A stretch of DNA of 64,000 nt, taken from positions 1 to 64,000 of the IMG/VR virus record IMGVR_UViG_3300027747_002221; one strand, 5' to 3'. Within the stretch, counting starts at the first letter, position 1; each line of letters starts with the position of its first letter. A program made the position numbers and the translations under genes. Below the pieces are notes generated by a model. The model searched no databases. It was not told the DNA's origin and worked only from the letters and a program-made list of their open reading frames with translations. Shown piece by piece: positions 18,844 through 31,847 of the stretch.

Positions 18844-19890
18844 TTAAACTGTCTTAATTGTTCCTAAATGAACATACTGAATGGCCTTGCCATCTTTTTC
18901 TACAGTATACTCAACATAAGGCTCGCCAGAATCAACCATGTAATTTTCGCCTAAAACTTTTCCGCCAGACATACGAATATCTTCGAACTTGCTTTCAAAG
19001 ATTTTCTTGGTCTGTGATTCGATAATTACGTCTGTGTAATTTTCGTTGAATGCTTCTGTAGCAATTGTAACGATTTCTTGTTGGACGTCTTCGCTTGTTT
19101 GTCCAACCATAGATTGTAATGCTCTTAGATAGTCTCCGTATGTGGGATTATCTGTTACTTCTAAAACGAAATCATTATAATTGATAACAGTCTGAGAAAT
19201 ACCTTCCTTCATTGCTTTCTTTTTTGGAGAATGAGGAACACCGGTATCCTTGGGCTGCTTAGGTGGATTCTTAGTATATTCAACACCGGTTTTAGTTTTC
19301 TTAGCAGAATGGCCTGTCAATTCGCCAGGTGCCTTTGGAATTTGACTTGGCATGGACATATCAAATGCAGTACCTTTAGATCTAGATTCTTTTACAGATG
19401 AAGCATCCGATTTAACTTTTTTCTTACCACCCATTTGGTCTTTACCTAAACGACCAGCAATTACATCGCCTCTTGTAACTTTATCATATGGAGGATAGTT
19501 ATTTGCTAAATTACCATCATTACCTTCTTCTACGGTGTCTGCTTCTTCAATAGTTTCGCCATCTTTAATAGCATGCTCGTGCATTTTAGCTTTTTTAATT
19601 TTCATTGCTTCGGTTTGAATTCTGCGATTGCCATCAGGAAATTTAACGTTGTACCAGGAAATGTTTCCATTTTCATCCGGTGCAGCGTGATCTTCGGAGA
19701 TGCATTCACCTTCCCCATATAAAGAATGTTCTACATGAGTAGCGCAATAGTGTGCACCATCTACTCTGCCTTCTTCTACAGAAGCTTCTTCATTCTCAAC
19801 TAATTGTTGAGATTCTCCGCGTCTCACTTTATTAATAGCATCAAATAAGCTATTAGAGATTCTATGGTTTGTTGGATCTGGTAAATTCAT
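18844..19890 (-). CDS. Hypothetical (putative head-associated) protein
   Basis: 348 aa, charged, with repeated hydrophobic-x-E sites (LVE, VEE, IEE). Confidence 0.5.
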   Translation of the reverse strand: MNLPDPTNHRISNSLFDAINKVRRGESQQLVENEEASVEEGRVDGAHYCATHVEHSLYGEGECISEDHAAPDENGNISWYNVKFPDGNRRIQTEAMKIKKAKMHEHAIKDGETIEEADTVEEGNDGNLANNYPPYDKVTRGDVIAGRLGKDQMGGKKKVKSDASSVKESRSKGTAFDMSMPSQIPKAPGELTGHSAKKTKTGVEYTKNPPKQPKDTGVPHSPKKKAMKEGISQTVINYNDFVLEVTDNPTYGDYLRALQSMVGQTSEDVQQEIVTIATEAFNENYTDVIIESQTKKIFESKFEDIRMSGGKVLGENYMVDSGEPYVEYTVEKDGKAIQYVHLGTIKTV

Positions 19891-19914
19891 AATGGTTTCC
19901 TTCTATTGTTCTTT

Positions 19915-21387
19915 TTATTTATTAAGCCTAATATCGGCCTTTTGCTGGGGAGTGGGTTTGGTTGCAGTTACTTTTTTAATATTGTTAGATATTAAACTTG
20001 CAATACCTTCTTTAATTTTTTGTTCAGGTTGTGCAGTTTGCTGAGACATTTTTTTTGCAGATTCTCTTGCTGCCTGTGCTGCTTCGTGATCTTCACGTTT
20101 TTTCTTTTCATTGTTTAATGCCATTGCCAATCTATCTCTGGCACTATATGCTTCACCCATTTTTAAATTAAGCATTTTAGGTTTAGCCATTTTATTTCGT
20201 ATTCTTTTGGCTTGTGCTACTGCTGGATCTTGATTCTTATGACTATTGATGTAATATACTTGCCTCGATTCGTCGGTATGTTCTACTTCTTCAGGCACAC
20301 AATTCGGAACTTGTTTTCCACCTTTATTTTTTGTACCAATCATTTTATAATTATCCCAGCAAGGATCTTCGCCTTTCATTTTTTTGGCTTCATCTATTTC
20401 ACTCATCATATAATTAGCAACTGTACTAATATAATCTTCTGCAAGAGTAATTTTAGATTGAACCCATTCAGCAATATTAGTATTATCTTCCAACATATCA
20501 TGCACTCGTTGGGCATTGTTAATGATACTTTGTAGTTGACCGCGAGCCATGTCGCCCTCATAGTCATATTCTTCTTTGTCTTTGTCTTCAAAGAATAAAT
20601 CTATATCTTCTTTCATTTGTTGTTTCATAGCCTGACGAGCAAGATGTTTTACGCGACTCATTGGGGTGTGCACTGCACCAGACTTATCTTTTACGGTTCC
20701 ATCACCAGAAGTTTTCTTATATGGACCATCAAATGGAGTATCATTTTTCGTATGATCTTCATTAGCTGTCACGCCTTTCTTTCTGATGCTAAGTTTATCT
20801 GCAGGATTGCCTCCACCAAACATACCGCTAAAAGCATCGCGCGCCTGTTGTTTAGTATCTGTTTTCTGTTGCTTAGCTACTTCTTTTTTATTGGTAATAC
20901 CTTTAAGCATCTTATCAAATTTTACATCGCCGGTTGCTTCCGCCACACCATTCGAATATTCATCGAACTGCGTTGATTCCGCAGAAACTCTCAAAGCCTT
21001 GGCCGTAGGTGCGCCTTTGCTTCCAGGTTTACGCATACGTTCACCAGATCCAGCCTTAATTCTTTTTCTTTTAGCGTGTATATTATCCCATAATCCACGC
21101 TCACCCTCACCAATAACATTTGTATCTTCTGGGTATTCTACGGAGTCACCTGTATATTTTCTACCACCTTGGTAATCTTTACTTGCGCCTGACATTATAC
21201 GGTTAGCATCCTCGTCAGGATATTTGGCTTGTATTCTTTTGTTTTGTTTCATAGCCAAAGAATGCGCTTTGTGCATAGTAGGTAGGTCACCCTTTTTGTA
21301 TGCATCGTTAGAGCGATTGTGCAATTTTTCTTTTCTACTGAGCATATCTGCGTATGCTTCATTTCTTATTTTTGAAAATGTTTTCAT
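19915..21387 (-). CDS. Mosaic putative internal head protein
   Basis: N-terminal MKTFSKIRNEA; modules GLWDNIHAKRKR..., EYDYEGDMA..., DPCWDNYKMIG..VPNCVP. Confidence 0.55.
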   Translation of the reverse strand: MKTFSKIRNEAYADMLSRKEKLHNRSNDAYKKGDLPTMHKAHSLAMKQNKRIQAKYPDEDANRIMSGASKDYQGGRKYTGDSVEYPEDTNVIGEGERGLWDNIHAKRKRIKAGSGERMRKPGSKGAPTAKALRVSAESTQFDEYSNGVAEATGDVKFDKMLKGITNKKEVAKQQKTDTKQQARDAFSGMFGGGNPADKLSIRKKGVTANEDHTKNDTPFDGPYKKTSGDGTVKDKSGAVHTPMSRVKHLARQAMKQQMKEDIDLFFEDKDKEEYDYEGDMARGQLQSIINNAQRVHDMLEDNTNIAEWVQSKITLAEDYISTVANYMMSEIDEAKKMKGEDPCWDNYKMIGTKNKGGKQVPNCVPEEVEHTDESRQVYYINSHKNQDPAVAQAKRIRNKMAKPKMLNLKMGEAYSARDRLAMALNNEKKKREDHEAAQAARESAKKMSQQTAQPEQKIKEGIASLISNNIKKVTATKPTPQQKADIRLNK

Positions 21388-21827
21388 TTCTTACCTCTTA
21401 CTAATCTATCTCTTTGCAATTGCCTTACTTTAGGCAATAGTTTTGTTGGCAAATTATTCATCATAGTCATTACTTTAGATGTTCTTGCTTCAATTGAATT
21501 TTTCTCAGTAGCAGATAGACTTTTCTTGCTTCTACCCTTTAACATTTTTTTTATAATCATTCTTCTGGCATCTGTCTTAGTTCTATTTTTTAGTGTGCCA
21601 AGAGTTGCAGATCTTTTTAATTTGACTTTTCTGGCTAATGCCATTAAAACTTTTCTTGACTTTAATTTCTGACTCTTTTTAATTCGTTCCTTAGCAGAAA
21701 TATCTTCAATAATCATATCTTCTTCATCAAATAAATGTATCACATCTTCCCATTCGAGACTTTCAATCAAAGCATCGATTTCTTCTTCGGTTACTTCTTC
21801 TTTGATAAACTCTTTGAAGGATATCAT
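21384..21827 (-). CDS. Hypothetical basic protein with capsid-targeting-like N-terminus
   Basis: MISFKEFIKEE, then acidic and very basic halves. Confidence 0.55.
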   Translation of the reverse strand: MISFKEFIKEEVTEEEIDALIESLEWEDVIHLFDEEDMIIEDISAKERIKKSQKLKSRKVLMALARKVKLKRSATLGTLKNRTKTDARRMIIKKMLKGRSKKSLSATEKNSIEARTSKVMTMMNNLPTKLLPKVRQLQRDRLVRGKK

Positions 21828-22264
21828 TTTAATGTTGCTTTTAACATCCAGCCGTGTTTTTCGTGAGCAATAATTCTATCCTGTAAGAAATTAGATACAC
21901 CTAACGACGTTGCTTTATCTGCAGCATCGTATGCTCTGTGTAATGATAATAAAACCACATTGTTTGCATCAAGTAAATTTTGCATCATTGTTCTTGCATC
22001 AATTTCAGGATTTTCGTCTTTTGATACTATGGACAAATTATAAATTTTTAATAGATCATATGGAGCATATGCATCCAATGCTCTGAGATGCTCTGCAATG
22101 GTATCTATTACTGCATAAACCTCTGTATAAACCATTTCTAAAAAATGATGATATTGAGGATGATTGGGGCCTTCGACATTCCAATGATACGAATGCGTTT
22201 TAAAATACATTAAATAGGTATCGGCAAATACCCTGTTCATTGCATCAATTAAATCCTGATTCAT
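21824..22264 (-). CDS. dps: Dps/ferritin-like DNA protection protein
   Basis: KTHSYHWNVEGP...HHFLE..Y...DTIAEHLRAL...HEKHGWML ferroxidase signature. Confidence 0.9.
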   Translation of the reverse strand: MNQDLIDAMNRVFADTYLMYFKTHSYHWNVEGPNHPQYHHFLEMVYTEVYAVIDTIAEHLRALDAYAPYDLLKIYNLSIVSKDENPEIDARTMMQNLLDANNVVLLSLHRAYDAADKATSLGVSNFLQDRIIAHEKHGWMLKATLK

Positions 22265-23598
22265 ATATGATCCATTGCCTTGTGTTTTTTCATCTGATTA
22301 TAGGCTGATGTGTGTTGCTGTAATTTTGCCTTAGCTAATTGTGCTTCTGCTTCTTGCTCCATCTTATCTAATTCCGCTGCCTGCACTTCGGGATTGTTTA
22401 TAAATGTTTTGAAGGATACCAACCCCAATGGCTTATCAGGGTAACCCTGGTCGTCTATCGTTTTATCAATACCATTATAAACATTTTTATCAGATGTTAT
22501 ATTAATATCCCTGTGCGCAGTCCTTGGATCAGGAAGACCTCTGGCTACGTCAACAGAATTATCTGAAGATGTGTGCACACCTGTCAAATGATTTTCTGTA
22601 ATTTCAGCAATTCTTTTTCTTAAATTAGACATTGTAATGGTCTCCTTGCCATCGGTACTCTGTACCTCTTTTGAATTATCAGTTTCGTTATTTAAAATCT
22701 GTTCTACTTTTTGCTTAGGCAAAAATAAAACGGGTATTTGTTTTTCCATAATTTTTCTAACAGGTTTAATAATAACGGGAGTTGTCTTAGATGATTCTTT
22801 AATATCTTTGATCCAATGCTTAACGGTTTTTCCTTCTGCTATTTTGATAGTAACATAGGATGACCCTCTAAATACAATAGGCCCCTTGTCACCATTCATT
22901 GCCTCAACAACATCATCTATTTTGTAAATTTGATTGTTTATGTATGTTTCTCTAATAGGATCAATCTCTTCTTTTAAAGGAGCAGCTTTAATATGGCCCA
23001 TGATTTCATTAGCGCTTGCCTTCAACGCATCGGGCAATGCTGATCTAAACTTGGCAGTATTACCTTTACGAGCATATTCTCTAATTTTTGTGCCAGACAT
23101 TCCTGCAACACCTTCCGCATCTGGATCTCGACTACCTGCAGAAACAACTTTTATTGATTTAAATTTATAACTACCATGTGGATATTTTTTACCGTCATTA
23201 TATTGATTGAGCAAATCCTGGTAATCTTTTACTCTATCGCTACCAGCAACCACTACCAAATGCTTGTGGCCTTGTCTGTGCAATCTTGCTGCAGCATGTA
23301 GTATTGTTGGTTCTTCTTTGGAAGAACCCGAAAGTTCTGTACTTGGTTTAACTATATTATGTAAGTAACCAAGTTTTGCTTTTTGAGGTACAGGATTTTT
23401 TGCAGTTCCCTCACTATGGGATGCTACAATATGGGCGGTGCCGCCATGTTGTTGTGCGACTTCCTCAGTCTTATGGATCAATTTCTCATGACCAATCGTA
23501 GGTGGGTTGAAGCGACCAAACGACATTACTGCCGTTGATTCTTCTTCCTTTTCCTTGGCCTTTTTAGCGGCCTCATTTAGGTATTGTTTAAAATCCAT
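22261..23598 (-). CDS. HIGH-type (cytidylyltransferase-like) nucleotidyltransferase domain protein
   Basis: FGRFNPPTIGHEKL, VVAGSDR, MSGTKIR; likely start MDFKQYLNEAA at 23598. Confidence 0.75.
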   Translation of the reverse strand: MDFKQYLNEAAKKAKEKEEESTAVMSFGRFNPPTIGHEKLIHKTEEVAQQHGGTAHIVASHSEGTAKNPVPQKAKLGYLHNIVKPSTELSGSSKEEPTILHAAARLHRQGHKHLVVVAGSDRVKDYQDLLNQYNDGKKYPHGSYKFKSIKVVSAGSRDPDAEGVAGMSGTKIREYARKGNTAKFRSALPDALKASANEIMGHIKAAPLKEEIDPIRETYINNQIYKIDDVVEAMNGDKGPIVFRGSSYVTIKIAEGKTVKHWIKDIKESSKTTPVIIKPVRKIMEKQIPVLFLPKQKVEQILNNETDNSKEVQSTDGKETITMSNLRKRIAEITENHLTGVHTSSDNSVDVARGLPDPRTAHRDINITSDKNVYNGIDKTIDDQGYPDKPLGLVSFKTFINNPEVQAAELDKMEQEAEAQLAKAKLQQHTSAYNQMKKHKAMDHI

Positions 23599-23624
23599 TT
23601 GAATATAATGTTGATGCAACCTAT

Positions 23625-23632
23625 TATTTATA
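23625..23632 (-). promoter_or_regulatory. T4-type late promoter TATAAATA
   Basis: Exact TATAAATA on minus strand upstream of 22261..23598. Confidence 0.6.
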
Positions 23633-23647
23633 TGTTTAGGTATTTGG

Positions 23648-23764
23648 TTATTCCGTGTCTTTGGGTGATTGCTGTTGAGGTTTTGGATTACTAGGTAGCG
23701 GGGGGATAGGGTATGTTTTTTTAGTAGGAAATTTCCTGCCTGGGCGGTGCCTAAACCAACTCAT
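23648..23764 (-). CDS. Small Pro-rich basic ORF (38 aa)
   Basis: MSWFRHRPGRKFPTKKTYPIPPLPSNPKPQQQSPKDTE; GGAG upstream; not in ORF track. Confidence 0.4.
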   Translation of the reverse strand: MSWFRHRPGRKFPTKKTYPIPPLPSNPKPQQQSPKDTE

Positions 23765-23792
23765 ATACTACTCCAAAGTTATCCAAAATGTG

Positions 23793-23821
23793 TTGACTAT
23801 CTATTGACTCGATGTTATACT
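23793..23821 (+). promoter_or_regulatory. Sigma70-type promoter, plus strand (antisense to the region)
   Basis: TTGACT-17 nt-TATACT with TG extended -10. Confidence 0.5.
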
Positions 23822-23847
23822 TGCTATGTACCCTGTTAATACGAGCA

Positions 23848-24282
23848 TTAGCAATTCCACTTGCGTAGCGCTTTATTTATTCTTGAATCTGGGTCATGTG
23901 CAGTCTTCGCAGATGTTAATCTCTTCTTCATACCGCCCATGCGAGCACAAAAGGACTTGCGACGATTTGCTGCTTTACTTCCCTTCTTCAATTTAGATGG
24001 TTTAGTTGTAACAGCAGTTTGCAGATGCGATCCGGGATGTTCTCTTCTGTAGGCCATCACACCTGACTTGGTTAAGCCACCCGCTGGGTTTTTATATTTA
24101 GAATCTTGCCAATCCTCGGCTAAACCAAAAAGAATATCGTCATCCATATCTTTGTAGTGTTCCCAAAGAGCTTCGGAGTCAATACCTTGTTCTGCGGATA
24201 AAGTCTCTATATAGTCTTCTACTACATCAAACAATTCATCTAGTATTGTTTTTTCTTTAAGGTAAGATTTGAAATTTATCAT
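23848..24282 (-). CDS. Conserved phage protein (DUF6321-like) with capsid-targeting-like N-terminus
   Basis: MINFKSYLKEK; KNPAGGLT..G...RRKSFCARM...DPDSRINKALRKWNC. Confidence 0.6.
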   Translation of the reverse strand: MINFKSYLKEKTILDELFDVVEDYIETLSAEQGIDSEALWEHYKDMDDDILFGLAEDWQDSKYKNPAGGLTKSGVMAYRREHPGSHLQTAVTTKPSKLKKGSKAANRRKSFCARMGGMKKRLTSAKTAHDPDSRINKALRKWNC

Positions 24283-25457
24283 TTGTTTAGATTCTGACCA
24301 GAGAATCCCTCTTTGCTTCGGTTAACAACTTTAGATACAGAGCCATCTTTGTATCCAACGACAAACCCTTCTGGTTTAGCTTGTTTGCCGTTAATAGTAT
24401 GTTCCTGATTTTGACCGCTCATTTCTAATCTATCGAGTAATACATTCTTTGCCTTATCTAAACTCTTATGAGCATTAAATAGGTGTTGGAATTGATCCTT
24501 GTTCTCTTCTACTTCATGAACCATGCTATCATGGTGTGTTAGTTTCTTTTGCTTGGCAGCTGCAGTCTTTACCTTGTCAACGTCTTTTTGAAGTTTTTCC
24601 GATAGGTGTTTCTTATATCCTGCAGGATTTGGTTGTGTACCTTCTCTTACAGTTTTATTTATGTATGTCTGTAAATGCTCAGAGTGTCCTTCAACCAAGC
24701 CATCGTGGTCTCTTATTTTTGCAAAGGATTCTTTTGCATTATTAAAATGTTTTTTAAATTCTGCTTGATGTTCTGGGGTATAATTAATATTTCCTCTGTT
24801 TAACTTATTATTAAATACGTGCACATCAGGGCTAGCATGTTCAAATTTACTAGTATCAATATTGTATTCTCTTTGATCACCGTGTAGTCTAGTATGCAGA
24901 GCAACACTAATCTTAGCATTCTTTAATTTTTTCCCCTCGTCTGAATCTGCAGGAATAGAATATTTAATTAGTTGTTCTTTAGTGGACATTCTATTTCCTT
25001 TTTCTGGAAATATAGTCTTGTCTTTTTTACTGCCCATGAAGTCGCCTTGCACAACTCCATCTAACGGTGACATTATCTTTTTACCGTGCTCTAATAGTTG
25101 AGCCATTTTACCATGGAGACCGGGTTTGTCTCCAAACTTTTCTTTTAAATCTTTTTCATTAAAAGAATATCCTTTGGATGCACCTTTATATGCCACACCA
25201 AATTCTTTTTTGCCTGTATGAGAATTTATTACATGTCCCATTTCAAAAGAGGGGGAACCGTCTGCTTTAATACCTACTCTTGATACGTTGGATGGTTCAC
25301 CTTTGGCAAATTTATGTAGTTGTTCTAATCTATCTAAATCTGTATTTGATCTTGCTTTACCGTAGAAATGCTCTTCGCCTGCTAGATGTGTTAGATGTTT
25401 AATTGCGCCTGTTGTTGCTGCCGCGGCTTCAGCTAAAAATTCTGAAAATTCTATCAT
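24279..25457 (-). CDS. RNA-ligase-like covalent nucleotidyltransferase-fold protein (DUF6267-like)
   Basis: IKADG (KxDG motif I), VVQGDF (III), EGFVV (IV), KVVNR (V); N-terminal MIEFSEFLAEAA. Confidence 0.6.
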   Translation of the reverse strand: MIEFSEFLAEAAAATTGAIKHLTHLAGEEHFYGKARSNTDLDRLEQLHKFAKGEPSNVSRVGIKADGSPSFEMGHVINSHTGKKEFGVAYKGASKGYSFNEKDLKEKFGDKPGLHGKMAQLLEHGKKIMSPLDGVVQGDFMGSKKDKTIFPEKGNRMSTKEQLIKYSIPADSDEGKKLKNAKISVALHTRLHGDQREYNIDTSKFEHASPDVHVFNNKLNRGNINYTPEHQAEFKKHFNNAKESFAKIRDHDGLVEGHSEHLQTYINKTVREGTQPNPAGYKKHLSEKLQKDVDKVKTAAAKQKKLTHHDSMVHEVEENKDQFQHLFNAHKSLDKAKNVLLDRLEMSGQNQEHTINGKQAKPEGFVVGYKDGSVSKVVNRSKEGFSGQNLNK

Positions 25458-26644
25458 TGTGCTAGCTCTTTATTATGTTTGTCTAACAACTTCTTAACTT
25501 CTTGAGCATGATCTGCCTGAGATACATCTCTATGAAGATCTGGTAAAGTTGTAGATAGATTGGAATATTCTTTCATAACACTATGCTTTGGTCTGTGAAT
25601 AACTTGTGTCTTTCCGCTTTGTGTAGCAGCTATATTTATTTTACCATCCAATCTATCTAAATCTTTATTATCTAGATGTCCTAATGTTGTTACGCCTTTT
25701 AGATCATTATTATCACCGATAGTAAAAGTAGTTCCTTTATCTTTGTCTTTATTATGAATGTGTAGTGCATTAACTTTACTACTTTCAAGATATGCTCTTG
25801 TTGTTCCCTTAGGTGCATCTGTACTAAAACCATTTTCAATTACACCATTGGAATGATTTTCGTTTAGGTATTGTAGTATAGGTTTCCCGCCAACTTTAAC
25901 CTTAGATAAAGATTTTGCTAATGTTGGGTGCGTAAATTTCCATGTACGAGTCTTTTGATCAAAGTTTGCTGCCGATTGACCCATCTTTCCTCTATCTAAT
26001 TTTGATTCACCTTCAATTCTTGAGAACGGAGTCTTTATTTGTTCTTTCGGTGCTTCTTCTGAAACTTGTTTAACAACTCCTGAAAGTTTCTTTTTAGCTT
26101 TCTGACCTTTACCTTCATCGTGAGAAACGAAATCAATAGCAGTACCTGTAGAACCAGCAGATGCTGTTCCAAAGTTCTTTGCAATTCTTCCCTCAACATC
26201 AAAGCCACCTTTGGTGATTGGTGCTTTCTTTAATTCTTTAGGTGGTGCTAATTTTGATTGAGGTATTTCGCCGTGTTGTTCTGTAGATAATAATATTCTA
26301 CCTTGGTCATCGTGTCTCGCACCAGTAACTCGTACAGCAGTTCCTGCTTCGTGTGCGCCATGCGCACTTGCTAAAGTATGTGTAGTTGATTTTTTATCTT
26401 CATTATAATTTTCCCCGTGTTCGTTTTTGAACTCATCAGGTTTCATATATCTGGCAAAATTCGCAGTTACCTTCTTTCGTTGCTCTTTACTAAGAGTCGG
26501 CATTACGTAATTTCTGAGATGCCGAAGGCCTTTCTTTTCACTATCATTAATATTACCCGACATATTCTCGCGCTGGGCTTCTGATAGTAATGAATTTACT
26601 ATAATAGGAGATTCTTTAAGAAAAGCTTTGAAAGAATTGATCAT
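25454..26644 (-). CDS. Hypothetical protein, possible PD-(D/E)xK nuclease-like fold
   Basis: GFDVE...AIDF...EGESK..KMGQ; N-terminal MINSFKAFLKES. Confidence 0.45.
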   Translation of the reverse strand: MINSFKAFLKESPIIVNSLLSEAQRENMSGNINDSEKKGLRHLRNYVMPTLSKEQRKKVTANFARYMKPDEFKNEHGENYNEDKKSTTHTLASAHGAHEAGTAVRVTGARHDDQGRILLSTEQHGEIPQSKLAPPKELKKAPITKGGFDVEGRIAKNFGTASAGSTGTAIDFVSHDEGKGQKAKKKLSGVVKQVSEEAPKEQIKTPFSRIEGESKLDRGKMGQSAANFDQKTRTWKFTHPTLAKSLSKVKVGGKPILQYLNENHSNGVIENGFSTDAPKGTTRAYLESSKVNALHIHNKDKDKGTTFTIGDNNDLKGVTTLGHLDNKDLDRLDGKINIAATQSGKTQVIHRPKHSVMKEYSNLSTTLPDLHRDVSQADHAQEVKKLLDKHNKELAQ

Positions 26645-26673: not shown

Positions 26674-26681
26674 TATTTATA
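26674..26681 (-). promoter_or_regulatory. T4-type late promoter TATAAATA
   Basis: Exact match upstream of 25454..26644. Confidence 0.65.
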
Positions 26682-26698: not shown

Positions 26699-26724
26699 AA
26701 AAAAAGGGCGACCGAAGTCGCCCT
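26699..26724 (-). terminator. Intrinsic terminator with UUCG loop
   Basis: AGGGCGAC-TTCG-GTCGCCCT followed by T7 on minus strand. Confidence 0.85.
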
Positions 26725-28017: not shown

Positions 28018-28094
<77 letters not shown>

Positions 28095-28265
28095 AATTTA
28101 TTTAATTGTTTTCGTTACTATTAGTTTGTTGTTCGTTATATTGTTGAAGACGCATTTCAAATTGTTCTTCAGTCAAATTATGCCAACCTATACAAACTCC
28201 TGTTGGGCTACGACCACACCCGCATTGGGTATTTACTTCTGTCAAAGTATCTCTTGGATTAACTA

Positions 28266-28511
28266 TCATTCCATCTCCTTCTTTTTAATTTTCATTCCAA
28301 CAAATGTTCCAAAAAATGCACCTAGAATAGCAGGAATCATTAACCAATGATTCGTTGTATAATTTATAATAGCTATACTACCTAGCACATAGCAAGCCAC
28401 TGCCCATATACTAGCTTTTAATACTTGATTATGCTGTACATATCTTAAGTAATATGTATAAACTATATCGAGTAAAAAAATAGCTATAAATGTTGTTACA
28501 TAATCTATCAT
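28266..28511 (-). CDS. Small membrane protein
   Basis: Real start MIDYVTT at 28511 (the longer ORF overlaps tRNA-Leu); three hydrophobic segments. Confidence 0.6.
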   Translation of the reverse strand: MIDYVTTFIAIFLLDIVYTYYLRYVQHNQVLKASIWAVACYVLGSIAIINYTTNHWLMIPAILGAFFGTFVGMKIKKKEME

Positions 28512-28516
28512 ATTTT

Positions 28517-28602
28517 TGGTACCAGAGACGGGACTCGAACCCGTATGCCCTTGCGAGCGGCAGATTTTAAGTCTGCTGTGTATACCATTCCACCACTCTG
28601 GC
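28517..28602 (-). tRNA. tRNA-Leu(TAA)
   Basis: GCAGA-CTTAAAA-TCTGC, long variable arm, CCA. Confidence 0.92.
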
Positions 28603-28642
28603 ATTTGCTTATTATAAACTCTTTAGCTAAAAAGAACAATCT

Positions 28643-28933
28643 TTAGTCATCCAAAACATGATCCGCAACAGGCGAAACCTTATCCAAATAATTCTCTTTA
28701 TATCTTTTCTTTGATTCTTCCATATCAATGGAAATGCCAACTGAATCTTTTACTACAGTATAAACGGAATGCATAATCTTTTGTACCATTCTTTTTGCCA
28801 TGTCATCTATTACTTTATACGGATCGTCACCTGTTGCAATTCTTTGGAGAGCAAATCCATATTCATATTTACGAACTCGATCTACCCATTCTTCGAAAGT
28901 TTCATCTGGTTTTATTCTGATTACGTTGGACAT
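28643..28933 (-). CDS. Stand-alone glutamyl-tRNA reductase (HemA) dimerization-domain-like protein
   Basis: RVRKYEYGFALQRIATGDDPYKVIDDMAKRMVQKIMH fits the HemA C-terminal pattern RxxExxxAxxxLAxGxDPxxVLxxLxxxLxxKLxH. Confidence 0.6.
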   Translation of the reverse strand: MSNVIRIKPDETFEEWVDRVRKYEYGFALQRIATGDDPYKVIDDMAKRMVQKIMHSVYTVVKDSVGISIDMEESKKRYKENYLDKVSPVADHVLDD

Positions 28934-28939
28934 TCATTT

Positions 28940-29302
28940 TTAATCTTTAATTTGGCTATCGCCTGGCATTACTCTATAGTTATCTTCCACAGAATCTGGC
29001 GTGGAGACTTCTATAACTGTACCTGCTTCAATACACTCTAATTGGTGTGGCATACAAGGAACATTGTGCCATACCGCACCTTCATGCAATTCTTTTTCGA
29101 GAACTTCTGCTGTCATAGTATCAATCCAACGAACAATAAACTTGCCACTTTGTATGTACCAGGTTTCTTCTTTGTCTTTATGGAAGTGCATACTAAACTT
29201 AGCGCCCGCGTTGAAGTTCATAAACTTTCCGCAATATTTGTCATTGGTAGCCCAGATTAATTCTGAACCCCAACCTTTTGTAACCAAACCTGTTAATCTC
29301 AT
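28940..29302 (-). CDS. Cupin domain protein
   Basis: KGWGSELIW...FSMHFHKDKEETW...PHQL...EVST. Confidence 0.75.
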   Translation of the reverse strand: MRLTGLVTKGWGSELIWATNDKYCGKFMNFNAGAKFSMHFHKDKEETWYIQSGKFIVRWIDTMTAEVLEKELHEGAVWHNVPCMPHQLECIEAGTVIEVSTPDSVEDNYRVMPGDSQIKD

Positions 29303-29317
29303 TAAACTTCCTAACTA

Positions 29318-29391
29318 TGGAGCGGGATAGGAGAATCGAACTCCTGACTTGAACTTGGAAGGATCTCGTTTTACCACTAAACTAACCCCGC
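29318..29391 (-). tRNA. tRNA-Gly(TCC)
   Basis: Cloverleaf, CTTCCAA loop, CCA. Confidence 0.9.
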
Positions 29392-29883
29392 TTATGCTGC
29401 TAGCGCCGCCATAGCCATGACCTCTTTTAATCGGTCCGCGGCATAACTTGCGGCAAACGCATTTGGTTTAACCATAGGTACTACGTTACACATACCTTTG
29501 ATATAACCAACTGCTTGTTGAATAACTATAGAACTATTATAACATTCTTTAGGATTAATGTCAAGATGAATTTGAACTTCCTTGTCACCTATAACATCTG
29601 CTTCTAAAAGTTTGTGATATAATTCTGCAACTTTGTAAACTTCTGTCATTAGACGCATAGATGGTTTCCCCGCTTTTGCATCAAAGTCTATTTCAGTTTG
29701 TATTTCTCCAAAAATCTTACAACCATGGCATCCATCGATATGGACTACAATCGCAAGGGTATAATCTGCATACCATTTTCCATTGCGTCTATAGCGTTCG
29801 GAGTCTGCTCCTAAATATATTTTAGTTTCAGGACTTTGTTCTGCAATAAATCTTGTTACTTCAGCTATATCAATTTTTTTCAT
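29392..29883 (-). CDS. RNase H-like YkuK/DUF458 family protein
   Basis: IYLGADS...E..K...IHLDIN...KPNAFAASYAAD. Confidence 0.7.
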   Translation of the reverse strand: MKKIDIAEVTRFIAEQSPETKIYLGADSERYRRNGKWYADYTLAIVVHIDGCHGCKIFGEIQTEIDFDAKAGKPSMRLMTEVYKVAELYHKLLEADVIGDKEVQIHLDINPKECYNSSIVIQQAVGYIKGMCNVVPMVKPNAFAASYAADRLKEVMAMAALAA

Positions 29884-29897
29884 AGTAGCACCTTTTG

Positions 29898-29971
29898 TGG
29901 AGCGGGTAGCGAGAATCGAACTCGCGAATAAACCTTGGCAAGGTTTCAGGTTACCATTACATCATACCCGC
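29898..29971 (-). tRNA. tRNA-Gly(GCC)
   Basis: AAACC-TTGCCAA-GGTTT, CCA. Confidence 0.92.
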
Positions 29972-29979
29972 ATATTTAA

Positions 29980-30008
29980 ATTATAACACCAAACAAACAT
30001 TTTGTCAA
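29980..30008 (-). promoter_or_regulatory. Sigma70 early promoter
   Basis: TTGACA-17-TATAAT. Confidence 0.75.
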
Positions 30009-30016
30009 GCATTATT

Positions 30017-30090
30017 TGGTACCCCGTCACGGAGTCGAACCGCGGCCCTCAGTTTTGGAGACTGATGTGCTACCGTAACACTTACGAGAT
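30017..30090 (-). tRNA. tRNA-Trp(CCA)
   Basis: TCAGT-CTCCAAA-ACTGA, CCA. Confidence 0.88.
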
Positions 30091-30327
30091 ATTATTTTTA
30101 TACATAGCCATTAAGGCATCTTCTGTGGTCAAAATATCGTAGAACTCATCTTTGTCAGTTCCCGTATTATCAATTACGGATTTTTTTGATATGGATTTAA
30201 ACGCTTCATCTTCATTCTGTTGATCTTCAATTTCTCTTAGATCTCTGCCAAAAATAGCGTCCCATCTATTTTTGTATTCCTCATTGGTAACACTAAATGG
30301 TCTTGGGATAGAACCTTTTCCTGTCAT
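30082..30327 (-). CDS. Small hypothetical phage protein
   Basis: MTGKGSIPRPFSV...WDAIFG; TATAAATA at 30360-30367 upstream. Confidence 0.55.
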   Translation of the reverse strand: MTGKGSIPRPFSVTNEEYKNRWDAIFGRDLREIEDQQNEDEAFKSISKKSVIDNTGTDKDEFYDILTTEDALMAMYKNNIS

Positions 30328-30373
30328 TGCAATCTCCTAATAAATAAATGATAATAACATATTTATATCTACC

Positions 30374-30949
30374 ATGGATCCATACCTCGAGTTAGAAGTT
30401 TCTATCGACGCAACCGACGAAGAAATAAAAATACAATATAGAGCTATGGCTATGATTCATCATCCCGACAAAGGTGGAGATGAAGAAAAATTTAAACGTA
30501 TAAAAGAAGCGTATGAGATTTTATCTGATCCTATACGTCGTAAGGCATATGAAATATCTGGCGATGCAGAAACTAATTTACAAATTAGGAATGCTGCACT
30601 TGATCATATTGCTCAAATGATGGGACAAATTGTTCCCCAATTTAATTCTGAAGCTGATGATTTGTTTGCTATAATGAGACACGAAGTAAATAATATACGC
30701 CAGGGTATGATTGAAAATACAAACGTATGTGTTGGATATATGGCAAATCTACAAAAGGTTATGGTCAGAGTAAATGCCAAACATGATAAACATAATATCA
30801 TAATGGATATACTGCAAAAACAAATAGATTTTAGAAATCGAGAACACGCGGAATTTGCGCAACGTATTAAGGTTTGTGATCTTGAAATTGAAATTCTCAA
30901 AGACTACGAATATGGTTTAATAGAACGTATTCAATTGCCTGAGAATTAA
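30374..30949 (+). CDS. J-domain (DnaJ-like) protein
   Basis: MDPYLELEV...HHPDKGGDEEKFKRIKEAYEILSD (HPD motif), then helical C-terminus. Confidence 0.85.
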   Translation: MDPYLELEVSIDATDEEIKIQYRAMAMIHHPDKGGDEEKFKRIKEAYEILSDPIRRKAYEISGDAETNLQIRNAALDHIAQMMGQIVPQFNSEADDLFAIMRHEVNNIRQGMIENTNVCVGYMANLQKVMVRVNAKHDKHNIIMDILQKQIDFRNREHAEFAQRIKVCDLEIEILKDYEYGLIERIQLPEN

Positions 30950-30950
30950 A

Positions 30951-31024
30951 TGGATGCGGGAGATGGATTCGCACCACCCTCGAGAGAGCTTATGAGACTC
31001 TTCGGGTCACTAGACCTTCCCGCG
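30951..31024 (-). tRNA. Atypical tRNA-Met(CAT), initiator-like (C1:A72)
   Basis: CGCGGGA/TCCCGCA acceptor, 4-bp D-stem with 4-nt loop, CTCATAA loop, T-loop TGCGAAT, CCA. Confidence 0.7.
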
Positions 31025-31029
31025 CAATC

Positions 31030-31105
31030 TGGTGGTAATGAGTGGACTCGAACCACTAACACTCTGCTTATGAAGCAGGAAGACTAACCATTGTCCTACA
31101 TTACC
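31030..31105 (-). tRNA. tRNA-Met(CAT), elongator
   Basis: Cloverleaf, CTGC-TTCATAA-GCAG, CCA. Confidence 0.85.
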
Positions 31106-31124
31106 TATTACATAAAAATATAAA

Positions 31125-31214
31125 TGGCGGAGCGTCAGGGAGTCGAACCCTGTGAACCATTTTACCTGTTCTACGGTTTAGCAAACCGCTGCCTTACCAC
31201 CCGGCCCACGCTCC
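31125..31214 (-). tRNA. tRNA-Ser(GCT)
   Basis: GCGGT-TTGCTAA-ACCGT, long variable arm, GCCA. Confidence 0.92.
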
Positions 31215-31218
31215 ATTT

Positions 31219-31310
31219 TGGCGGAAGACGGAGGAGTCGAACCCCATCCCTGTTAAGAGAACCTGGTTTTCAAGGCCAGTCGCAGGACCAACCCCGCTGC
31301 ATCATCTTCC
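31219..31310 (-). tRNA. tRNA-Ser(TGA)
   Basis: CTGGC-CTTGAAA-ACCAG, long variable arm, GCCA. Confidence 0.88.
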
Positions 31311-31424
31311 AAATTTGTGTTAGGTATTTTTGTGTCAGGAACCTAACAAACCCCGTGAGCACAGCCCATCCTGTTTTCGTGTCAGCGGAGGCGGAATATG
31401 GTTACAGGTCCGCCCTGTTATTTA
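31311..31424 (-). ncRNA. Candidate structured ncRNA between tRNA-Phe and tRNA-Ser
   Basis: GC-rich non-coding spacer with several helices (see findings). Confidence 0.4.
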
Positions 31425-31500
31425 TGGTACCAAGAGACGGGATCGAACCGCCCACACCCGGATTTTCAATCCGGTGCTCTACCAACTGAGCTATCTTGGC
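31425..31500 (-). tRNA. tRNA-Phe(GAA)
   Basis: CCGGA-TTGAAAA-TCCGG, CCA. Confidence 0.93.
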
Positions 31501-31502
31501 AT

Positions 31503-31577
31503 TGGGTCGAGGTACGAGGATCGAACTCGTGATAGCGGAATCACAACCCGCGGTTTTACCACTAAACTAACCTCAAC
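31503..31577 (-). tRNA. tRNA-His(GTG)
   Basis: Encoded G-1:C73, GCGGG-TTGTGAT-TCCGC. Confidence 0.92.
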
Positions 31578-31583
31578 ATAGAT

Positions 31584-31660
31584 TGGCCGGCCCTGAGAGA
31601 CTCGAACTCCCAACCTCTAGTTTCGAAGACTAGCACTCTAATCCATTGAGTTAAGGGCCG
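31584..31660 (-). tRNA. tRNA-Arg(TCG)
   Basis: CTAGT-CTTCGAA-ACTAG, GCCA. Confidence 0.92.
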
Positions 31661-31664
31661 TTAT

Positions 31665-31756
31665 TGGTACCAGCGGTGAGACTCGAACTCACTCAAGAAC
31701 GCTAATCTGGCGCTAAAAGGTGTATAAGACCTCTCTGACTACCCAGTCTCGCTGGC
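31665..31756 (-). tRNA. Atypical tRNA with TAT anticodon and long variable arm
   Basis: GCCAGCG/CGCTGGT acceptor, GACT-GGGT-AGTC mini D-arm, GAGGT-CTTATAC-ACCTT, variable hairpin AGCGC/GCGTT, GTGAG-TTCGAGT-CTCAC, ACCA. Confidence 0.75.
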
Positions 31757-31847
31757 AATTAATACTGACTACCATATAGAAACACACTTGATATAGTAGC
31801 ATTTGCTATCACGGATGAACCCGAGTTTAATCAAATATGTTTTTATA
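31757..31847 (-). ncRNA. Candidate three-way-junction ncRNA
   Basis: 13-bp closing stem AAACATATTTGAT/ATCAAGTGTGTTT enclosing two hairpins. Confidence 0.45.

What the first reader, a model, noticed from the sequence alone, without database searches (positions are those of the whole stretch)
22261..26644. Nuclease-like, RNA-ligase-like and HIGH nucleotidyltransferase trio among the predicted cargo
Seen: 24279..25457 has ligase/capping-enzyme motifs in the right order (KADG, QGDF, EGFVV, KVVNR). 22261..23598 has a HIGH-like RFNPPTIGH and an MSGTK motif of the NMNAT/cytidylyltransferase fold. 25454..26644 has a weak E...D...ExK pattern. Inference: this could be an injected nucleic-acid repair or nucleotide-tagging module, for example tRNA repair against anticodon nucleases, NAD restoration, or protein/RNA NMPylation, active before phage gene expression. 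It lies just downstream of a 27-tRNA array.
Basis: inference. Interest (0 to 1): 0.7.

Follow-up and report, generated by a model that had tools for sequence, protein, structure and literature searches.

The report
Capsid-targeted enzyme cargo of T4-like phage
A marine T4-like phage carries a late operon of basic enzymes (a restriction-enzyme-like nuclease, an RNA-ligase-like enzyme and a HIGH-motif nucleotidyltransferase). Each starts with the ten-residue tag that phage T4 uses to load proteins into its head, so they are probably injected with the DNA, but what they do chemically is not known.

Summary
They are not chance.

- **ORF 24279-25457 (Pfam DUF6267, unstudied).** The predicted fold (pLDDT 90) matches RNA ligases best. 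It keeps KxDG and ligase motifs III, IV and V and has no OB domain.
- **ORF 22261-23598.** This belongs to the phage "cytidyltransferase" clade of HIGH nucleotidyltransferases. It does not qualify as NMNAT, PPAT or TagD.
- **ORF 25454-26644.** This is an SH3/Tudor-like barrel followed by a PD-(D/E)xK nuclease whose nearest structure is R.HhaI.

Three further points:

- **Packaging tag.** The genome is T4-like, with gp23 and the gp21 protease. Five consecutive genes at 21384-26644 begin with a copy of the T4 capsid-targeting sequence: aromatic residues at positions 4 and 7, I/L at 8 and E at 10. Both operons start at TATAAATA late-promoter motifs.
- **One unit.** DUF6267 and the nucleotidyltransferase are fused in 46 of the 149 listed family representatives.
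- **Virion evidence.** The cyanophage homologue of the nucleotidyltransferase has been found in virions by mass spectrometry.

Injected enzyme cargo is well supported. tRNA repair or NAD restoration remains unproven. I rate this a new variant of a known kind, T4 internal proteins.

The parts
26705..26724 (-). Intrinsic-terminator-like hairpin (8-bp stem, 6 GC pairs, T-run) closing the upstream HNH/tRNA-side transcription unit.
26674..26681 (-). TATAAATA, the T4-type late-promoter motif, 30 nt upstream of the ATG at 26644. Start of cargo operon 1.
   Evidence: TATAAATA as the T4 late-promoter consensus is from established knowledge.
25454..26644 (-). 396-aa basic protein (pI 9.5) with three parts: a CTS-like propeptide MINSFKAFLKE (26612-26644), an SH3/Tudor-like barrel (about residues 31-138), and a PD-(D/E)xK nuclease domain (about residues 142-386). 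Conserved catalytic-type residues: E151 (26192-26194), D171 (26132-26134), E213-S-K215 (26000-26008).
24279..25457 (-). 392-aa DUF6267 protein (pI 9.2), an RNA-ligase-like covalent nucleotidyltransferase. It has the CTS-like propeptide MIEFSEFLAE (25428-25457), motif I K64-A-D-G (25257-25268), a motif III-like QGDF (25038-25049), a helical insert at residues 228-345, motif IV EGFVV (24357-24371) and motif V KVVNR (24318-24332). Its start overlaps the stop of the nuclease gene by 4 nt.
23848..24282 (-). 144-aa DUF6321 protein (pI 9.2) with the CTS-like propeptide MINFKSYLKE (24253-24282). It overlaps the DUF6267 gene by 4 nt. In other phages DUF6321 is fused to the nucleotidyltransferase domain.
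23625..23632 (-). Second TATAAATA late-promoter motif, 27 nt upstream of the ATG at 23598. Start of cargo operon 2.
22261..23598 (-). 445-aa protein (pI 9.1). It has the CTS-like propeptide MDFKQYLNE (23572-23598) and a HIGH-superfamily nucleotidyltransferase domain (about 22984-23544) with RFNPPTIGH (23488-23514) and MSGTK (23086-23100). The C-terminal half (about 230 aa) is variable and uncharacterised, and includes a small module shared with other genes of this region.
21824..22264 (-). 146-aa Dps/ferritin-like protein with no CTS (pI 5.6). It is conserved directly after the nucleotidyltransferase in related phages.
21384..21827 (-). 147-aa very basic protein (pI 10.1) with the CTS-like propeptide MISFKEFIKE (21798-21827). 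Function unknown.
18844..21387 (-). Two further conserved genes of the module (490 aa and 348 aa). They are built from short modules shared with cyanophage proteins. The S-SZBM1 protein that shares a short module with the 490-aa ORF (SSZBM1_139; 41 aa, 49% identity, E 1e-8) was detected in virions.
28018..33784 (-). tRNA array upstream of the cargo operons (25 genes by ARAGORN). The layout parallels T4, where ipI, ipII and ipIII flank the tRNA cluster.

Best explanation
The trio is part of a block of late genes in a marine T4-like myovirus (222 kb, 35.6% GC). Its products are loaded into the prohead by a T4-type capsid-targeting sequence (CTS) and delivered into the next host cell together with the DNA.

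**Packaging (inferred from T4).** Five consecutive genes begin with M-x-x-[F/Y]-x-x-[F/Y]-[L/I]-x-E. By analogy with T4, this propeptide docks the protein on the scaffolding core, and the phage's gp21-type protease removes it after the glutamate. The mature basic protein then stays among the packed DNA and leaves through the tail at infection.

**The cargo here is enzymes:**
- a nuclease of the restriction-endonuclease (PD-(D/E)xK, HhaI/MspI-like) fold with an N-terminal SH3/Tudor-like barrel;
- DUF6267, a divergent RNA-ligase-type enzyme that should form a lysyl-NMP intermediate on K64 and pass the nucleotide to a 5'-phosphate end;
- a HIGH-motif nucleotidyltransferase of a phage-only clade.

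**DUF6267 and the nucleotidyltransferase form one functional unit.** In about a third of the listed family representatives they are one polypeptide, in either order. They are neighbours in cyanophages, pelagiphages and methylophages.

**Most likely role (inference).** The enzymes process nucleic-acid ends (cut, nucleotidylate, seal) in the first minutes of infection, before any phage gene is expressed. The purpose would be to counter host damage to RNA or DNA, or to disable host nucleic acids.

**Shown here:** motifs, folds, fusions, synteny, the CTS match, promoter motifs, and presence of the protease.

**Inferred:** packaging, cleavage, injection, substrates.

**What the confidence covers.** The figure given is for the whole account. 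On my estimate the fold assignments are about 0.85, packaging through the tag about 0.7, and the end-processing role about 0.35.
For: **T4-like head machinery.** The genome encodes gp23 (E 4e-142) and the gp21 protease PF03420 (E 2e-35). The capsid protein is 64% identical to that of Pelagibacter phage HTVC008M.

**CTS match.**
- T4 ipII and ipIII start MKTYQEFIAE, and ipI starts MKTFKEF....
- The five window genes start MINSFKAFLKE, MIEFSEFLAE, MINFKSYLKE, MDFKQYLNE and MISFKEFIKE.
- In T4, residues 4 and 7 carry targeting and residues 8 and 10 carry processing (PMC9026906). These are the four conserved positions here.
- Genome-wide the motif occurs at 6 of 3155 candidate starts, and 5 of those are this cluster. 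Shuffles give a mean of 0.68 and a maximum of 4.
- The motif is kept in 98/117, 30/37 and 88/120 homologues of three unrelated families. It is also present in Melnitz, in P-SSM4 and in the fusion proteins.

**Late operon structure.**
- TATAAATA motifs lie 27-30 nt upstream of both operon starts. A terminator lies just before the first.
- Gene overlaps of 4 nt link the genes within each operon.

**Other T4 parallels.**
- All five CTS proteins are basic, pI 9.1-10.1.
- T4's ip genes flank its tRNA cluster, as these genes do here.

**Proteomics.**
- The cytidylyltransferase was detected in CsCl-purified virions of S-CREM2 and S-SZBM1 (PMC10665884, PMC9146016).
- In S-SZBM1 the detected cytidylyltransferase has a CTS-like start (MRFRQFIIE). 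The CTS-less DUF6267 next to it was not listed.

**Folds.**
- DUF6267 model pLDDT 90.4. VIA top ten are all RNA or tRNA ligases, bar one chain deposited as a putative DNA ligase (NgrRnl Z 9.2, REL1 8.0, Rnl2 7.8, Trl1 7.8, MthRnl 7.4, Rnl1 7.2).
- AFDB and BFVD matches outside the family are RNA ligases.
- Nuclease model: R.HhaI Z 9.0, then NhoI, I-Ssp6803I, Hjc, MspI and HinP1I.

**Functional link between DUF6267 and the nucleotidyltransferase.**
- 46 of the 149 listed DUF6267 cluster representatives, and 46 of the 53 that are 470 aa or longer, also contain the nucleotidyltransferase domain.
- P0284 has the reverse domain order. In S-PM2 the two are fused.
- The two genes are adjacent in S-SZBM1 and P-SSM4, and lie one or two small genes apart in HTVC008M and Melnitz.
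Against: - I have no direct evidence for this phage: no virion proteome, no N-terminal sequencing, no activity data.
- The CTS reading rests on a 10-residue motif and on analogy with T4, a distant relative.
- In S-SZBM1 a neighbouring protein without the motif (SSZBM1_139) was also found in virions. The authors of the proteome papers themselves warn that abundant late proteins can co-purify.
- Sequence models do not place DUF6267 in any ligase family. Only 1 of 51 members gives a weak Rnl1 hit, at E 0.033. Foldseek against the PDB is not significant (best E 0.05). A VIA Z of about 9 is only modestly above that tool's stated background of 7-8.
- The genome has no DNA methyltransferase and avoids no 4-base palindrome. 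A packaged 4-cutter would therefore meet sites in the phage's own DNA.
- The complex prediction for DUF6267 plus the nucleotidyltransferase gave no answer (0.30 against a mark of 0.32).
- I found no kinase or phosphatase for end healing in this genome.
Confidence: 0.55

Rival explanations
1. These are ordinary late-expressed cytoplasmic enzymes that are not packaged. On this reading the shared N-terminal motif is an amphipathic start that helps expression or folding. The enzymes would act inside the producing cell, for example on DNA maturation or late RNA metabolism.
For: Cyanophage S-CAM1 and S-SZBM1 copies of DUF6267 lack the motif and yet are conserved. DUF6267 was not listed in the S-SZBM1 virion proteome. 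In cyanophages the genes sit among replication genes (gp41, MazG, gp61).
Against: The motif is shared by at least five unrelated proteins only in this gene block. It coincides residue for residue with the experimentally mapped determinants of the T4 CTS. It accompanies the one member found in virions. The genes have late-promoter motifs, and their products are basic like T4 internal proteins.
Confidence: 0.15
2. This is an NAD+ module. The HIGH enzyme would be an NMN adenylyltransferase that restores NAD+ after host NADase defences (Thoeris, SIR2, DSR). DUF6267 would be an NAD+-using ligase-type enzyme, so that the NMN it releases is recycled by its fused partner.
For: The GRFxPxxxGH and SGTxIR motifs resemble archaeal and NadR-type NMNAT. 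Weak profile matches exist to MJ0541 NMNAT (E 0.03) and NadR (E 0.065) and to TIGR01526 (E 0.015). Some database records and papers call the cyanophage protein NMNAT. The nucleotidyltransferase is fused to P-loop kinases in other phages, as in NadR.
Against: Scores are far below every NMNAT threshold (14.5 against 341 bits). Matches cover only the generic nucleotide-binding motifs. ATP sulfurylase and the MJ0951/TmcAL-type protein score as well or better. I found no Nampt or other NAD salvage partner next to it. The NAD+ dependence of DUF6267 is pure conjecture.
Confidence: 0.12
3. This is dedicated tRNA repair, as with T4 Pnkp and Rnl1. On this reading DUF6267 reseals tRNAs cut by host anticodon nucleases, and the nucleotidyltransferase restores or tags ends.
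For: The structure is closest to RNA and tRNA ligases. DUF6267 is fused to a pol-beta nucleotidyltransferase in P0316, recalling the RlaP association with RNA ligases described in PMC7824862. HTVC008M places a Zeta/AAA_33 P-loop kinase between DUF6267 and the nucleotidyltransferase. The phage also invests in 25 tRNAs.
Against: The genome has no kinase or phosphatase for end healing, no 2H phosphoesterase was seen, and there is no Rnl1 or Rnl2. HIGH nucleotidyltransferases are not known to extend RNA ends. The pair is near-universal in phages of streamlined hosts (SAR11, picocyanobacteria), which suggests a core step of infection and not a niche counter-defence. Closeness to the tRNAs is explained by T4-type genome layout.
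Confidence: 0.2
4. The HIGH enzyme is an auxiliary metabolic gene that makes CDP-glycerol or NDP-sugars (TagD-like) for cell-surface modification, and the rest is unrelated.
For: This is the usual database name, and it is the interpretation in cyanophage papers (PMC9146016, PMC7824862).
Against: It barely passes the generic Pfam model and matches no TagD-type model. It is fused to an RNA-ligase-like domain in a third of the listed family representatives. It carries a capsid-targeting tag and is found in virions. No glycosyltransferase genes are nearby.
Confidence: 0.05

Closest known systems
Phage T4 internal proteins IPI, IPII, IPIII and Alt (CTS-directed head cargo, processed by gp21 and injected)
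   Same: - The N-terminal tag is about 10 residues long and has the same four determinant positions.
- The genome has a gp21-type protease.
- The genes have late-promoter motifs and the products are basic.
- The genes lie beside the tRNA cluster.
- The slot has variable content between related phages.
- Alt shows that an enzyme can be such cargo.
   Different: - The mature parts are unrelated to any T4 IP or to Alt.
- The cargo here is three nucleic-acid or nucleotide enzymes of 390-445 aa, not small inhibitor proteins.
- Packaging and cleavage have not been shown.
ATP-dependent RNA ligases (Rnl2/REL1, Rnl5 NgrRnl, Rnl1/Trl1, Rnl3) of the covalent nucleotidyltransferase superfamily
   Same: - The predicted nucleotidyltransferase fold is shared.
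- The KxDG lysine motif and motifs III, IV and V occur in the same order.
- There is no OB domain.
   Different: - No ligase sequence model recognises it (its own Pfam family is DUF6267).
- A helical domain of about 120 residues is inserted between motifs IIIa and IV.
- An invariant HLxHLED-like N-terminal element is present.
- Its habitual partner is a HIGH nucleotidyltransferase, not a kinase-phosphatase.
HIGH-signature nucleotidylyltransferases (archaeal/NadR NMNAT, PPAT, ATP sulfurylase, FMNAT, TagD, MJ0951/TmcAL-type)
   Same: - It has the (T/H)xGH and ISxTxxR-type motifs.
- The domain is about 190 residues.
- It passes the Pfam PF01467 cut-off.
   Different: - It is a phage-only clade (over 3500 proteins at E <= 0.001) with its own conserved AGSDR, YN and RDPD motifs.
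- It reaches no equivalog model.
- It is promiscuously fused to DUF6267, Zeta-type kinases, ATP-grasp, pol-beta nucleotidyltransferase plus PAP2, DUF5824 and DUF6321.
Type IIP restriction endonucleases R.HhaI, MspI, HinP1I (PD-(D/E)xK)
   Same: - The core fold is shared.
- The E...D...ExK catalytic signature is conserved.
   Different: - The genome has no cognate methyltransferase.
- An extra N-terminal SH3/Tudor-like barrel is present.
- A disordered 30-residue insert is present.
- It carries a capsid-targeting tag.
- Its specificity is unknown.

Membership tests
Covalent nucleotidyltransferase superfamily (polynucleotide ligases / capping enzymes) | Motif I KxDG with the nucleophilic lysine | tested here: met
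   K64-A-D66-G67. K, D and G are invariant in 51 homologues and nearly invariant in 53 further distant members.
Covalent nucleotidyltransferase superfamily (polynucleotide ligases / capping enzymes) | Motifs III, IIIa, IV and V downstream of motif I, in order, on beta-strands of the nucleotidyltransferase fold | tested here: met
   QGD139 lies in strand 135-143 and Y166 in strand 165-169. E363-G-x-V lies in strand 364-369 and K376...R380 in strand 374-378. All are invariant or nearly so. Assigning a role to each residue is inference.
Covalent nucleotidyltransferase superfamily (polynucleotide ligases / capping enzymes) | Three-dimensional similarity to solved ligase nucleotidyltransferase domains | tested here: met
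   VIA-align top ten are all RNA or tRNA ligases, bar one chain deposited as a putative DNA ligase, Z 9.2-6.7, with 163-204 residues aligned. An AFDB RNA-ligase-domain protein matches at E 2.8e-4, probability 1.0. Foldseek against the PDB alone is not significant.
Covalent nucleotidyltransferase superfamily (polynucleotide ligases / capping enzymes) | Formation of a covalent enzyme-NMP intermediate | not testable with these tools
   This needs a labelled-nucleotide adenylylation assay.
T4 Rnl1 (PF09511) or Rnl2 (PF09414) families | Recognition by the family's sequence model | tested here: not met
   No hit for the window protein. Only 1 of 51 family members gives RNA_lig_T4_1, at E 0.033. hhalign against T4 Rnl2 found nothing meaningful.
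DNA ligases / mRNA capping enzymes | OB-fold domain following the nucleotidyltransferase domain | tested here: not met
   The model ends 12 residues after motif V. The only extra domain is the helical insert at 228-345.
HIGH-signature nucleotidylyltransferase superfamily (PF01467) | (H/T)xGH motif after the first strand, and an ISxTxxR-like motif near the C-terminus of the domain | tested here: met
   GRFNPPTIGH (residues 28-37) and GMSGTKIR (166-173) are conserved. PF01467 scores 21.6 bits against a cut-off of 21. phrog_3041 gives E 2e-53.
NMN adenylyltransferase (NadR/NadM/archaeal type) | Score over the curated equivalog threshold, with a match beyond the generic nucleotide-binding motifs | tested here: not met
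   TIGR01526 scores 14.5 bits against 341. The profile against the PDB gives MJ0541 E 0.03 and NadR E 0.065, on motif stretches only.
PD-(D/E)xK nuclease superfamily | Conserved acidic-acidic-lysine signature on the alpha-beta-beta-beta core | tested here: met
   E151 lies in helix 145-157, followed by D171, and E213-x-K215 lies in strand 211-216. VIA gives R.HhaI Z 9.0 over 179 residues. Most of the other VIA matches over this domain are nucleases of this fold.
PD-(D/E)xK nuclease superfamily | Recognition by a curated sequence family | tested here: not met
   No Pfam, PHROG or NCBIfam family matches.
T4-type CTS-directed internal (ejected) head proteins | N-terminal propeptide with aromatic residues at positions 4 and 7 (targeting) and I/L at 8 and E at 10 (gp21 processing) | tested here: met
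   Five genes carry the motif, in register within one residue. T4 reference sequences were read from NC_000866. The determinants come from PMC9026906.
T4-type CTS-directed internal (ejected) head proteins | A gp21-family prohead protease and a T4-type head module in the same genome | tested here: met
   PF03420 at E 2e-35 and gp23 at E 4e-142. Portal, core, protease, scaffold and capsid genes are in T4 order.
T4-type CTS-directed internal (ejected) head proteins | Physical presence of the processed protein in virions and its ejection into the host | not testable with these tools
   There is only indirect support: homologous cytidylyltransferases were found in the S-CREM2 and S-SZBM1 virion proteomes.

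The most novel reading that the evidence does not exclude
Marine T4-like phages, including relatives of the phages of SAR11, OM43 and picocyanobacteria, load their heads with a fixed enzyme kit through the T4 capsid-targeting tag. The kit is a restriction-like nuclease plus a two-part nucleotide-transfer machine (RNA-ligase-like DUF6267 with a phage-specific HIGH nucleotidyltransferase). The DUF6267-nucleotidyltransferase pair would carry out a reaction not yet described, for example 5'-end nucleotidylation or capping of RNA or DNA, or a ligase fed by its own cofactor synthetase, at the moment of DNA entry.
Probability: 0.3. Interest if true: 0.8.

Novelty: new variant of a known kind. Interest (0 to 1): 0.62.

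Why it matters
- **Natural cargo.** T4's capsid-targeting tag is a classic result and is used in engineering to deliver foreign proteins. Natural cargo known so far is mostly small inhibitors plus the Alt enzyme. If confirmed, this shows that a very abundant group of ocean phages uses the same tag for a set of nucleic-acid enzymes.
- **A puzzling observation explained.** It would explain why "cytidyltransferase" keeps turning up in cyanophage virion proteomes.
- **Two large unstudied families.** DUF6267 has about 2650 cluster representatives. The phage HIGH-nucleotidyltransferase clade has over 3500 proteins. Both get a testable context, including a strong fusion link between them. The papers I found call the second an auxiliary metabolic gene for cell-wall synthesis, or an NMNAT homologue, on thin grounds.

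Tried and rejected
- **DNA search.** megablast of the region against 50,697 phage records found no match.
- **Single-sequence PDB searches.** phmmer of the three proteins against PDB sequences found nothing useful.
- **DUF6267 against ligases by sequence.** hhalign of the DUF6267 profile against T4 Rnl2 gave no meaningful alignment. A Pfam scan of 51 DUF6267 members at E <= 10 gave no consistent ligase hits.
- **Nuclease against occupants of the same slot.** hhalign of the nuclease profile against the proteins in the same slot in Melnitz and S-CAM1 aligned only the CTS. I therefore rejected a single orthologous "nuclease" family across phages, although the occupant in relative L014 also looks REase-like.
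- **Complex prediction.** DUF6267 plus the nucleotidyltransferase gave no answer.
- **Packaged restriction enzyme sparing the phage genome.** No 4-mer palindrome is absent (the lowest is GGCC, at 0.61 of expectation). I found no C5, N4/N6 or Dam methyltransferase. The idea is not supported.
- **RNA-repair partners in the genome.** I found no Pnkp-type kinase domain, Rnl1 or Rnl2.
- **TATAAATA enrichment.** The motif is not enriched in the window overall (11 found against 16 expected). Only its position in front of the two operons counts.
- **MJ0951/TmcAL-type match.** The match of the nucleotidyltransferase profile (E 5e-6) rests partly on the N-terminal helix, so I treat it as a lead only.
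- **Literature.** There are no papers on DUF6267, DUF6321 or DUF5824. Burroughs and Aravind 2016 could not be read.

Full report
**What is in the sequence**

Between 18.8 and 29.9 kb every real gene is on the minus strand. All the motifs sit at the stated places, which I checked by translation:
- KADG is residues 64-67, QGDF 137-140, EGFVV 363-367 and KVVNR 376-380 of ORF 24279-25457.
- RFNPPTIGH is residues 29-37 and MSGTK 167-171 of ORF 22261-23598.
- E151, D171 and E213-x-K215 are in ORF 25454-26644.

None of this is chance, because each motif falls on invariant or nearly invariant columns of a large family:
- ORF 24279-25457: 540 proteins at E <= 0.001. K64, D66, G67, Q137, G138, E363, G364, V366, K376 and R380 are invariant among 51 sequences at 36-84% identity.
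- ORF 22261-23598: 3526 proteins at E <= 0.001. G28, R29, N31, P32, G36, H37 and S168 are invariant down to 26% identity.
- ORF 25454-26644: 39 proteins. E151, E213 and K215 are invariant, and D171 is conserved in at least 90%.

The tRNA array holds 25 genes by ARAGORN and 23 by Rfam, not 27.

**What kind of genome this is**

- The window is the first 64 kb of a 222,055-bp virus contig with 35.6% GC.
- The contig encodes a T4 gp23 capsid protein (PF07068, E 4e-142) and a T4 gp21 prohead protease (PF03420, E 2e-35).
- Portal, core, protease, scaffold and capsid genes are in T4 order.
- The capsid protein is at most 64% identical to any isolate. The nearest are Pelagibacter phages HTVC008M and Mosig, Methylophilales phage Melnitz and Synechococcus phage S-SKS1.
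- The phage is therefore an uncultured marine T4-like myovirus related to the Kyanoviridae.

**The three proteins**

*ORF 24279-25457 (DUF6267)*
- It is Pfam DUF6267 (E 2e-45), and no paper mentions this family.
- The AlphaFold model built on 51 homologues is confident (pLDDT 90.4, pTM 0.84).
- Foldseek against the PDB gives only weak hits, though DNA ligase IV and T4 Rnl1 are among them.
- The Foldseek-independent VIA search of 48,161 chains puts RNA ligases in almost every top place:
  - Naegleria nick-sealing ligase, Z 9.2
  - trypanosome REL1, Z 8.0
  - T4 Rnl2, Z 7.8
  - fungal Trl1, Z 7.8 and 7.4
  - archaeal Rnl3, Z 7.4
  - T4 Rnl1, Z 7.2
  - DNA ligases follow at about Z 6.
- In AlphaFold DB the first matches outside the family are an "RNA ligase domain-containing protein" (E 2.8e-4, probability 1.0) and long "cytidyltransferase-like" proteins.
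- In the viral library, the family is again followed by phage and giant-virus RNA ligases.
- The motifs lie where ligase motifs I, III, IIIa, IV and V lie, on successive strands.
- A helical domain (residues 228-345) is inserted before motif IV, and there is no OB domain.
- Sequence models of Rnl1 and Rnl2 do not recognise it.
- I therefore call it a separate, RNA-ligase-like family of the covalent nucleotidyltransferase superfamily. Catalysis through K64 is inferred.

*ORF 22261-23598 (HIGH nucleotidyltransferase)*
- It passes the generic Pfam model PF01467 narrowly (21.6 against 21 bits). It matches PHROG "cytidyltransferase" families strongly (E 2e-53).
- A family profile searched against all PDB sequences finds only the two generic nucleotide-binding motifs. 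These occur in MJ0951 (E 5e-6), ATP sulfurylase, archaeal NMNAT, NadR, FMNAT and PPAT.
- No NCBIfam equivalog is approached.
- It is a phage-specific clade of the HIGH superfamily with an unknown substrate. The names NMNAT, PPAT and TagD found in database records are not earned.

*ORF 25454-26644 (nuclease)*
- It has no family in Pfam, PHROGs or NCBIfam.
- Its model (pLDDT 82.6) has an SH3/Tudor-like barrel at residues 31-138 and a C-terminal domain.
- The best structural match of the C-terminal domain is R.HhaI (Z 9.0, 179 residues aligned). NhoI, I-Ssp6803I, Hjc, MspI, D212, HinP1I, MutH and PvuII follow, all PD-(D/E)xK nucleases.
- The conserved E, D and ExK residues sit on the helix and strands where that fold carries its active site.

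**The wider pattern: a capsid-targeting tag**

- Five consecutive genes start with nearly the same ten residues: MINSFKAFLKE, MIEFSEFLAE, MINFKSYLKE, MDFKQYLNE and MISFKEFIKE.
- Read from the T4 reference genome, ipII and ipIII start MKTYQEFIAE and ipI starts MKTFKEF....
- In T4 this propeptide is the capsid-targeting sequence. Mutational work summarised in PMC9026906 places targeting at residues 4 and 7 and gp21 processing at residues 8 and 10. Those are exactly the four positions conserved here.
- Across all 3155 candidate start codons of the genome the motif occurs six times, and five of these are this block. Shuffled N-termini give 0.68 on average and never more than 4.
- The tag is kept in most homologues of the three unrelated families (98/117, 30/37, 88/120).
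- It is also present in the corresponding Melnitz genes, in the P-SSM4 cytidyltransferase, and in the DUF6267-nucleotidyltransferase fusion proteins.
- Other T4 features are present too:
  - A strong terminator is followed by TATAAATA 30 nt before the first gene. A second TATAAATA stands 27 nt before the nucleotidyltransferase gene. Genes within each operon overlap by 4 nt.
  - All five tagged proteins have pI 9.1-10.1.
  - The block lies next to the tRNA cluster, as T4's ip genes do.

**Experimental support from the literature**

- Virion mass spectrometry of cyanophage S-CREM2 found the cytidylyltransferase and three neighbouring gene products. The authors note "frequent detection" of cytidyltransferases in cyanophage virions (PMC10665884).
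- S-SZBM1 virions contained "one enzyme (cytidylyltransferase)" (PMC9146016).
- I located that locus. The detected S-SZBM1 cytidylyltransferase starts MRFRQFIIE|A, a CTS-like tag. The adjacent DUF6267 (SSZBM1_141) starts MAKNTHLEHLEDD without a tag and is not in the list.
- That is one case only. An untagged neighbour (SSZBM1_139) was also detected, so the correlation is suggestive and not proof.

**The ligase-like and HIGH enzymes are one unit**

- Among the 149 best cluster representatives of DUF6267 (out of 2654 at E <= 0.001 in 1.84 billion proteins), 46 also contain the phage nucleotidyltransferase domain. These 46 make up almost all (46 of 53) of the proteins of 470 aa or more.
- The order is usually DUF6267 then nucleotidyltransferase, but P0284 has the reverse order. 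S-PM2 carries a 591-aa fusion.
- Where the two are separate genes they lie side by side or a gene or two apart, downstream of the gp41 helicase, in S-SZBM1, P-SSM4, HTVC008M and Melnitz.
- Two related metagenomic phages show the same block, down to the Dps-like gene that follows.
- Other fusion partners:
  - of the nucleotidyltransferase: Zeta/AAA_33 kinases, ATP-grasp, pol-beta nucleotidyltransferase plus PAP2, DUF5824 and DUF6321;
  - of DUF6267: a pol-beta nucleotidyltransferase and LysM.
- A complex prediction for the two separate proteins gave no answer.

**The nuclease slot varies**

- The gene before DUF6267 is a different protein in different phages. BLAST and hhalign align only the tag.
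- The 340-aa occupant in the nearest large relative nevertheless also resembles HaeIII/MspI/HinP1I-type enzymes.
- This is like the T4 ip loci, where only the tag is conserved.

**Mechanism and its limits**

The best-supported account runs as follows:
1. The genes are expressed late.
2. The tag docks the proteins on the scaffolding core.
3. The gp21-type protease cleaves after the glutamate.
4. The mature proteins stay in the DNA-filled head.
5. They are ejected into the next host.

I cannot establish what the enzymes do there. I favour nucleic-acid end processing (cutting, nucleotidylation, sealing) before phage gene expression begins.

- tRNA repair in the T4 sense lacks its healing enzymes here.
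- NAD restoration lacks any specific NMNAT signal.
- A self-sparing injected restriction enzyme is not supported, because the genome avoids no 4-base palindrome and has no DNA methyltransferase.

**Novelty**

- CTS-directed cargo is textbook for T4, and the presence of cytidyltransferase in cyanophage virions has been noted.
- I found no earlier report of three things:
  - T4-type tags on this whole enzyme block in marine T4-like phages;
  - the assignment of DUF6267 to the RNA-ligase fold;
  - the pervasive fusion of DUF6267 with the HIGH nucleotidyltransferase.
- I rate the finding a new variant of a known kind, with interest of about 0.6.

Noticed in passing
window 3593-4684, 8097-9116, 11626-12693 (minus strand): Three paralogous radical-SAM genes (phrog_1802, E 1e-33 to 2e-65) lie among unknown ORFs, just before the tail-fibre genes. 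This is an unusual cluster for a T4-like phage.
   Followed up: no
window 27762-28004 (minus strand): An 80-aa ORF lies directly after tRNA-Met. The copy of this gene in a related phage hits PF01192 (RNA polymerase omega/Rpb6). This would be a phage-encoded omega-like subunit.
   Followed up: partly
window 21824-22264 (minus strand): A Dps/ferritin-like gene (PF00210, E 3e-22) without a capsid tag is conserved directly after the nucleotidyltransferase in two related metagenomic phages (L013, L014).
   Followed up: partly
window 26746-27309 (minus strand): An HNH/endonuclease VII-like ORF (phrog_3322, E 2e-26) sits between the tRNA region and the cargo operon. A strong terminator follows at 26705-26724. 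The relative L014 has an 87% identical copy.
   Followed up: no
window 28266-28604 (minus strand): This mechanical ORF overlaps tRNA-Leu (28517-28602), so its N-terminal part is an artefact of reading through the tRNA gene.
   Followed up: no
genome G000:C1:94903-95532 (minus strand), outside the window: A 209-aa ORF sits between the portal and the protease, in the position of the T4 prohead-core genes. It starts MKKFKELRE, a looser version of the same N-terminal tag.
   Followed up: partly
L005 (Pelagibacter phage HTVC008M) 5288-5950: A Zeta-toxin/AAA_33 P-loop kinase gene sits between DUF6267 and the nucleotidyltransferase in HTVC008M. This window has no counterpart.
   Followed up: partly
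window 22261-22980 and 18844-21387: The C-terminal half of the nucleotidyltransferase protein and the 490-aa and 348-aa ORFs share short mobile modules (phrog_22379, phrog_4808, DUF6321-like, a CWxxYK...GGKxVPNC motif). The same modules occur in cyanophage proteins of the same region.
   Followed up: no
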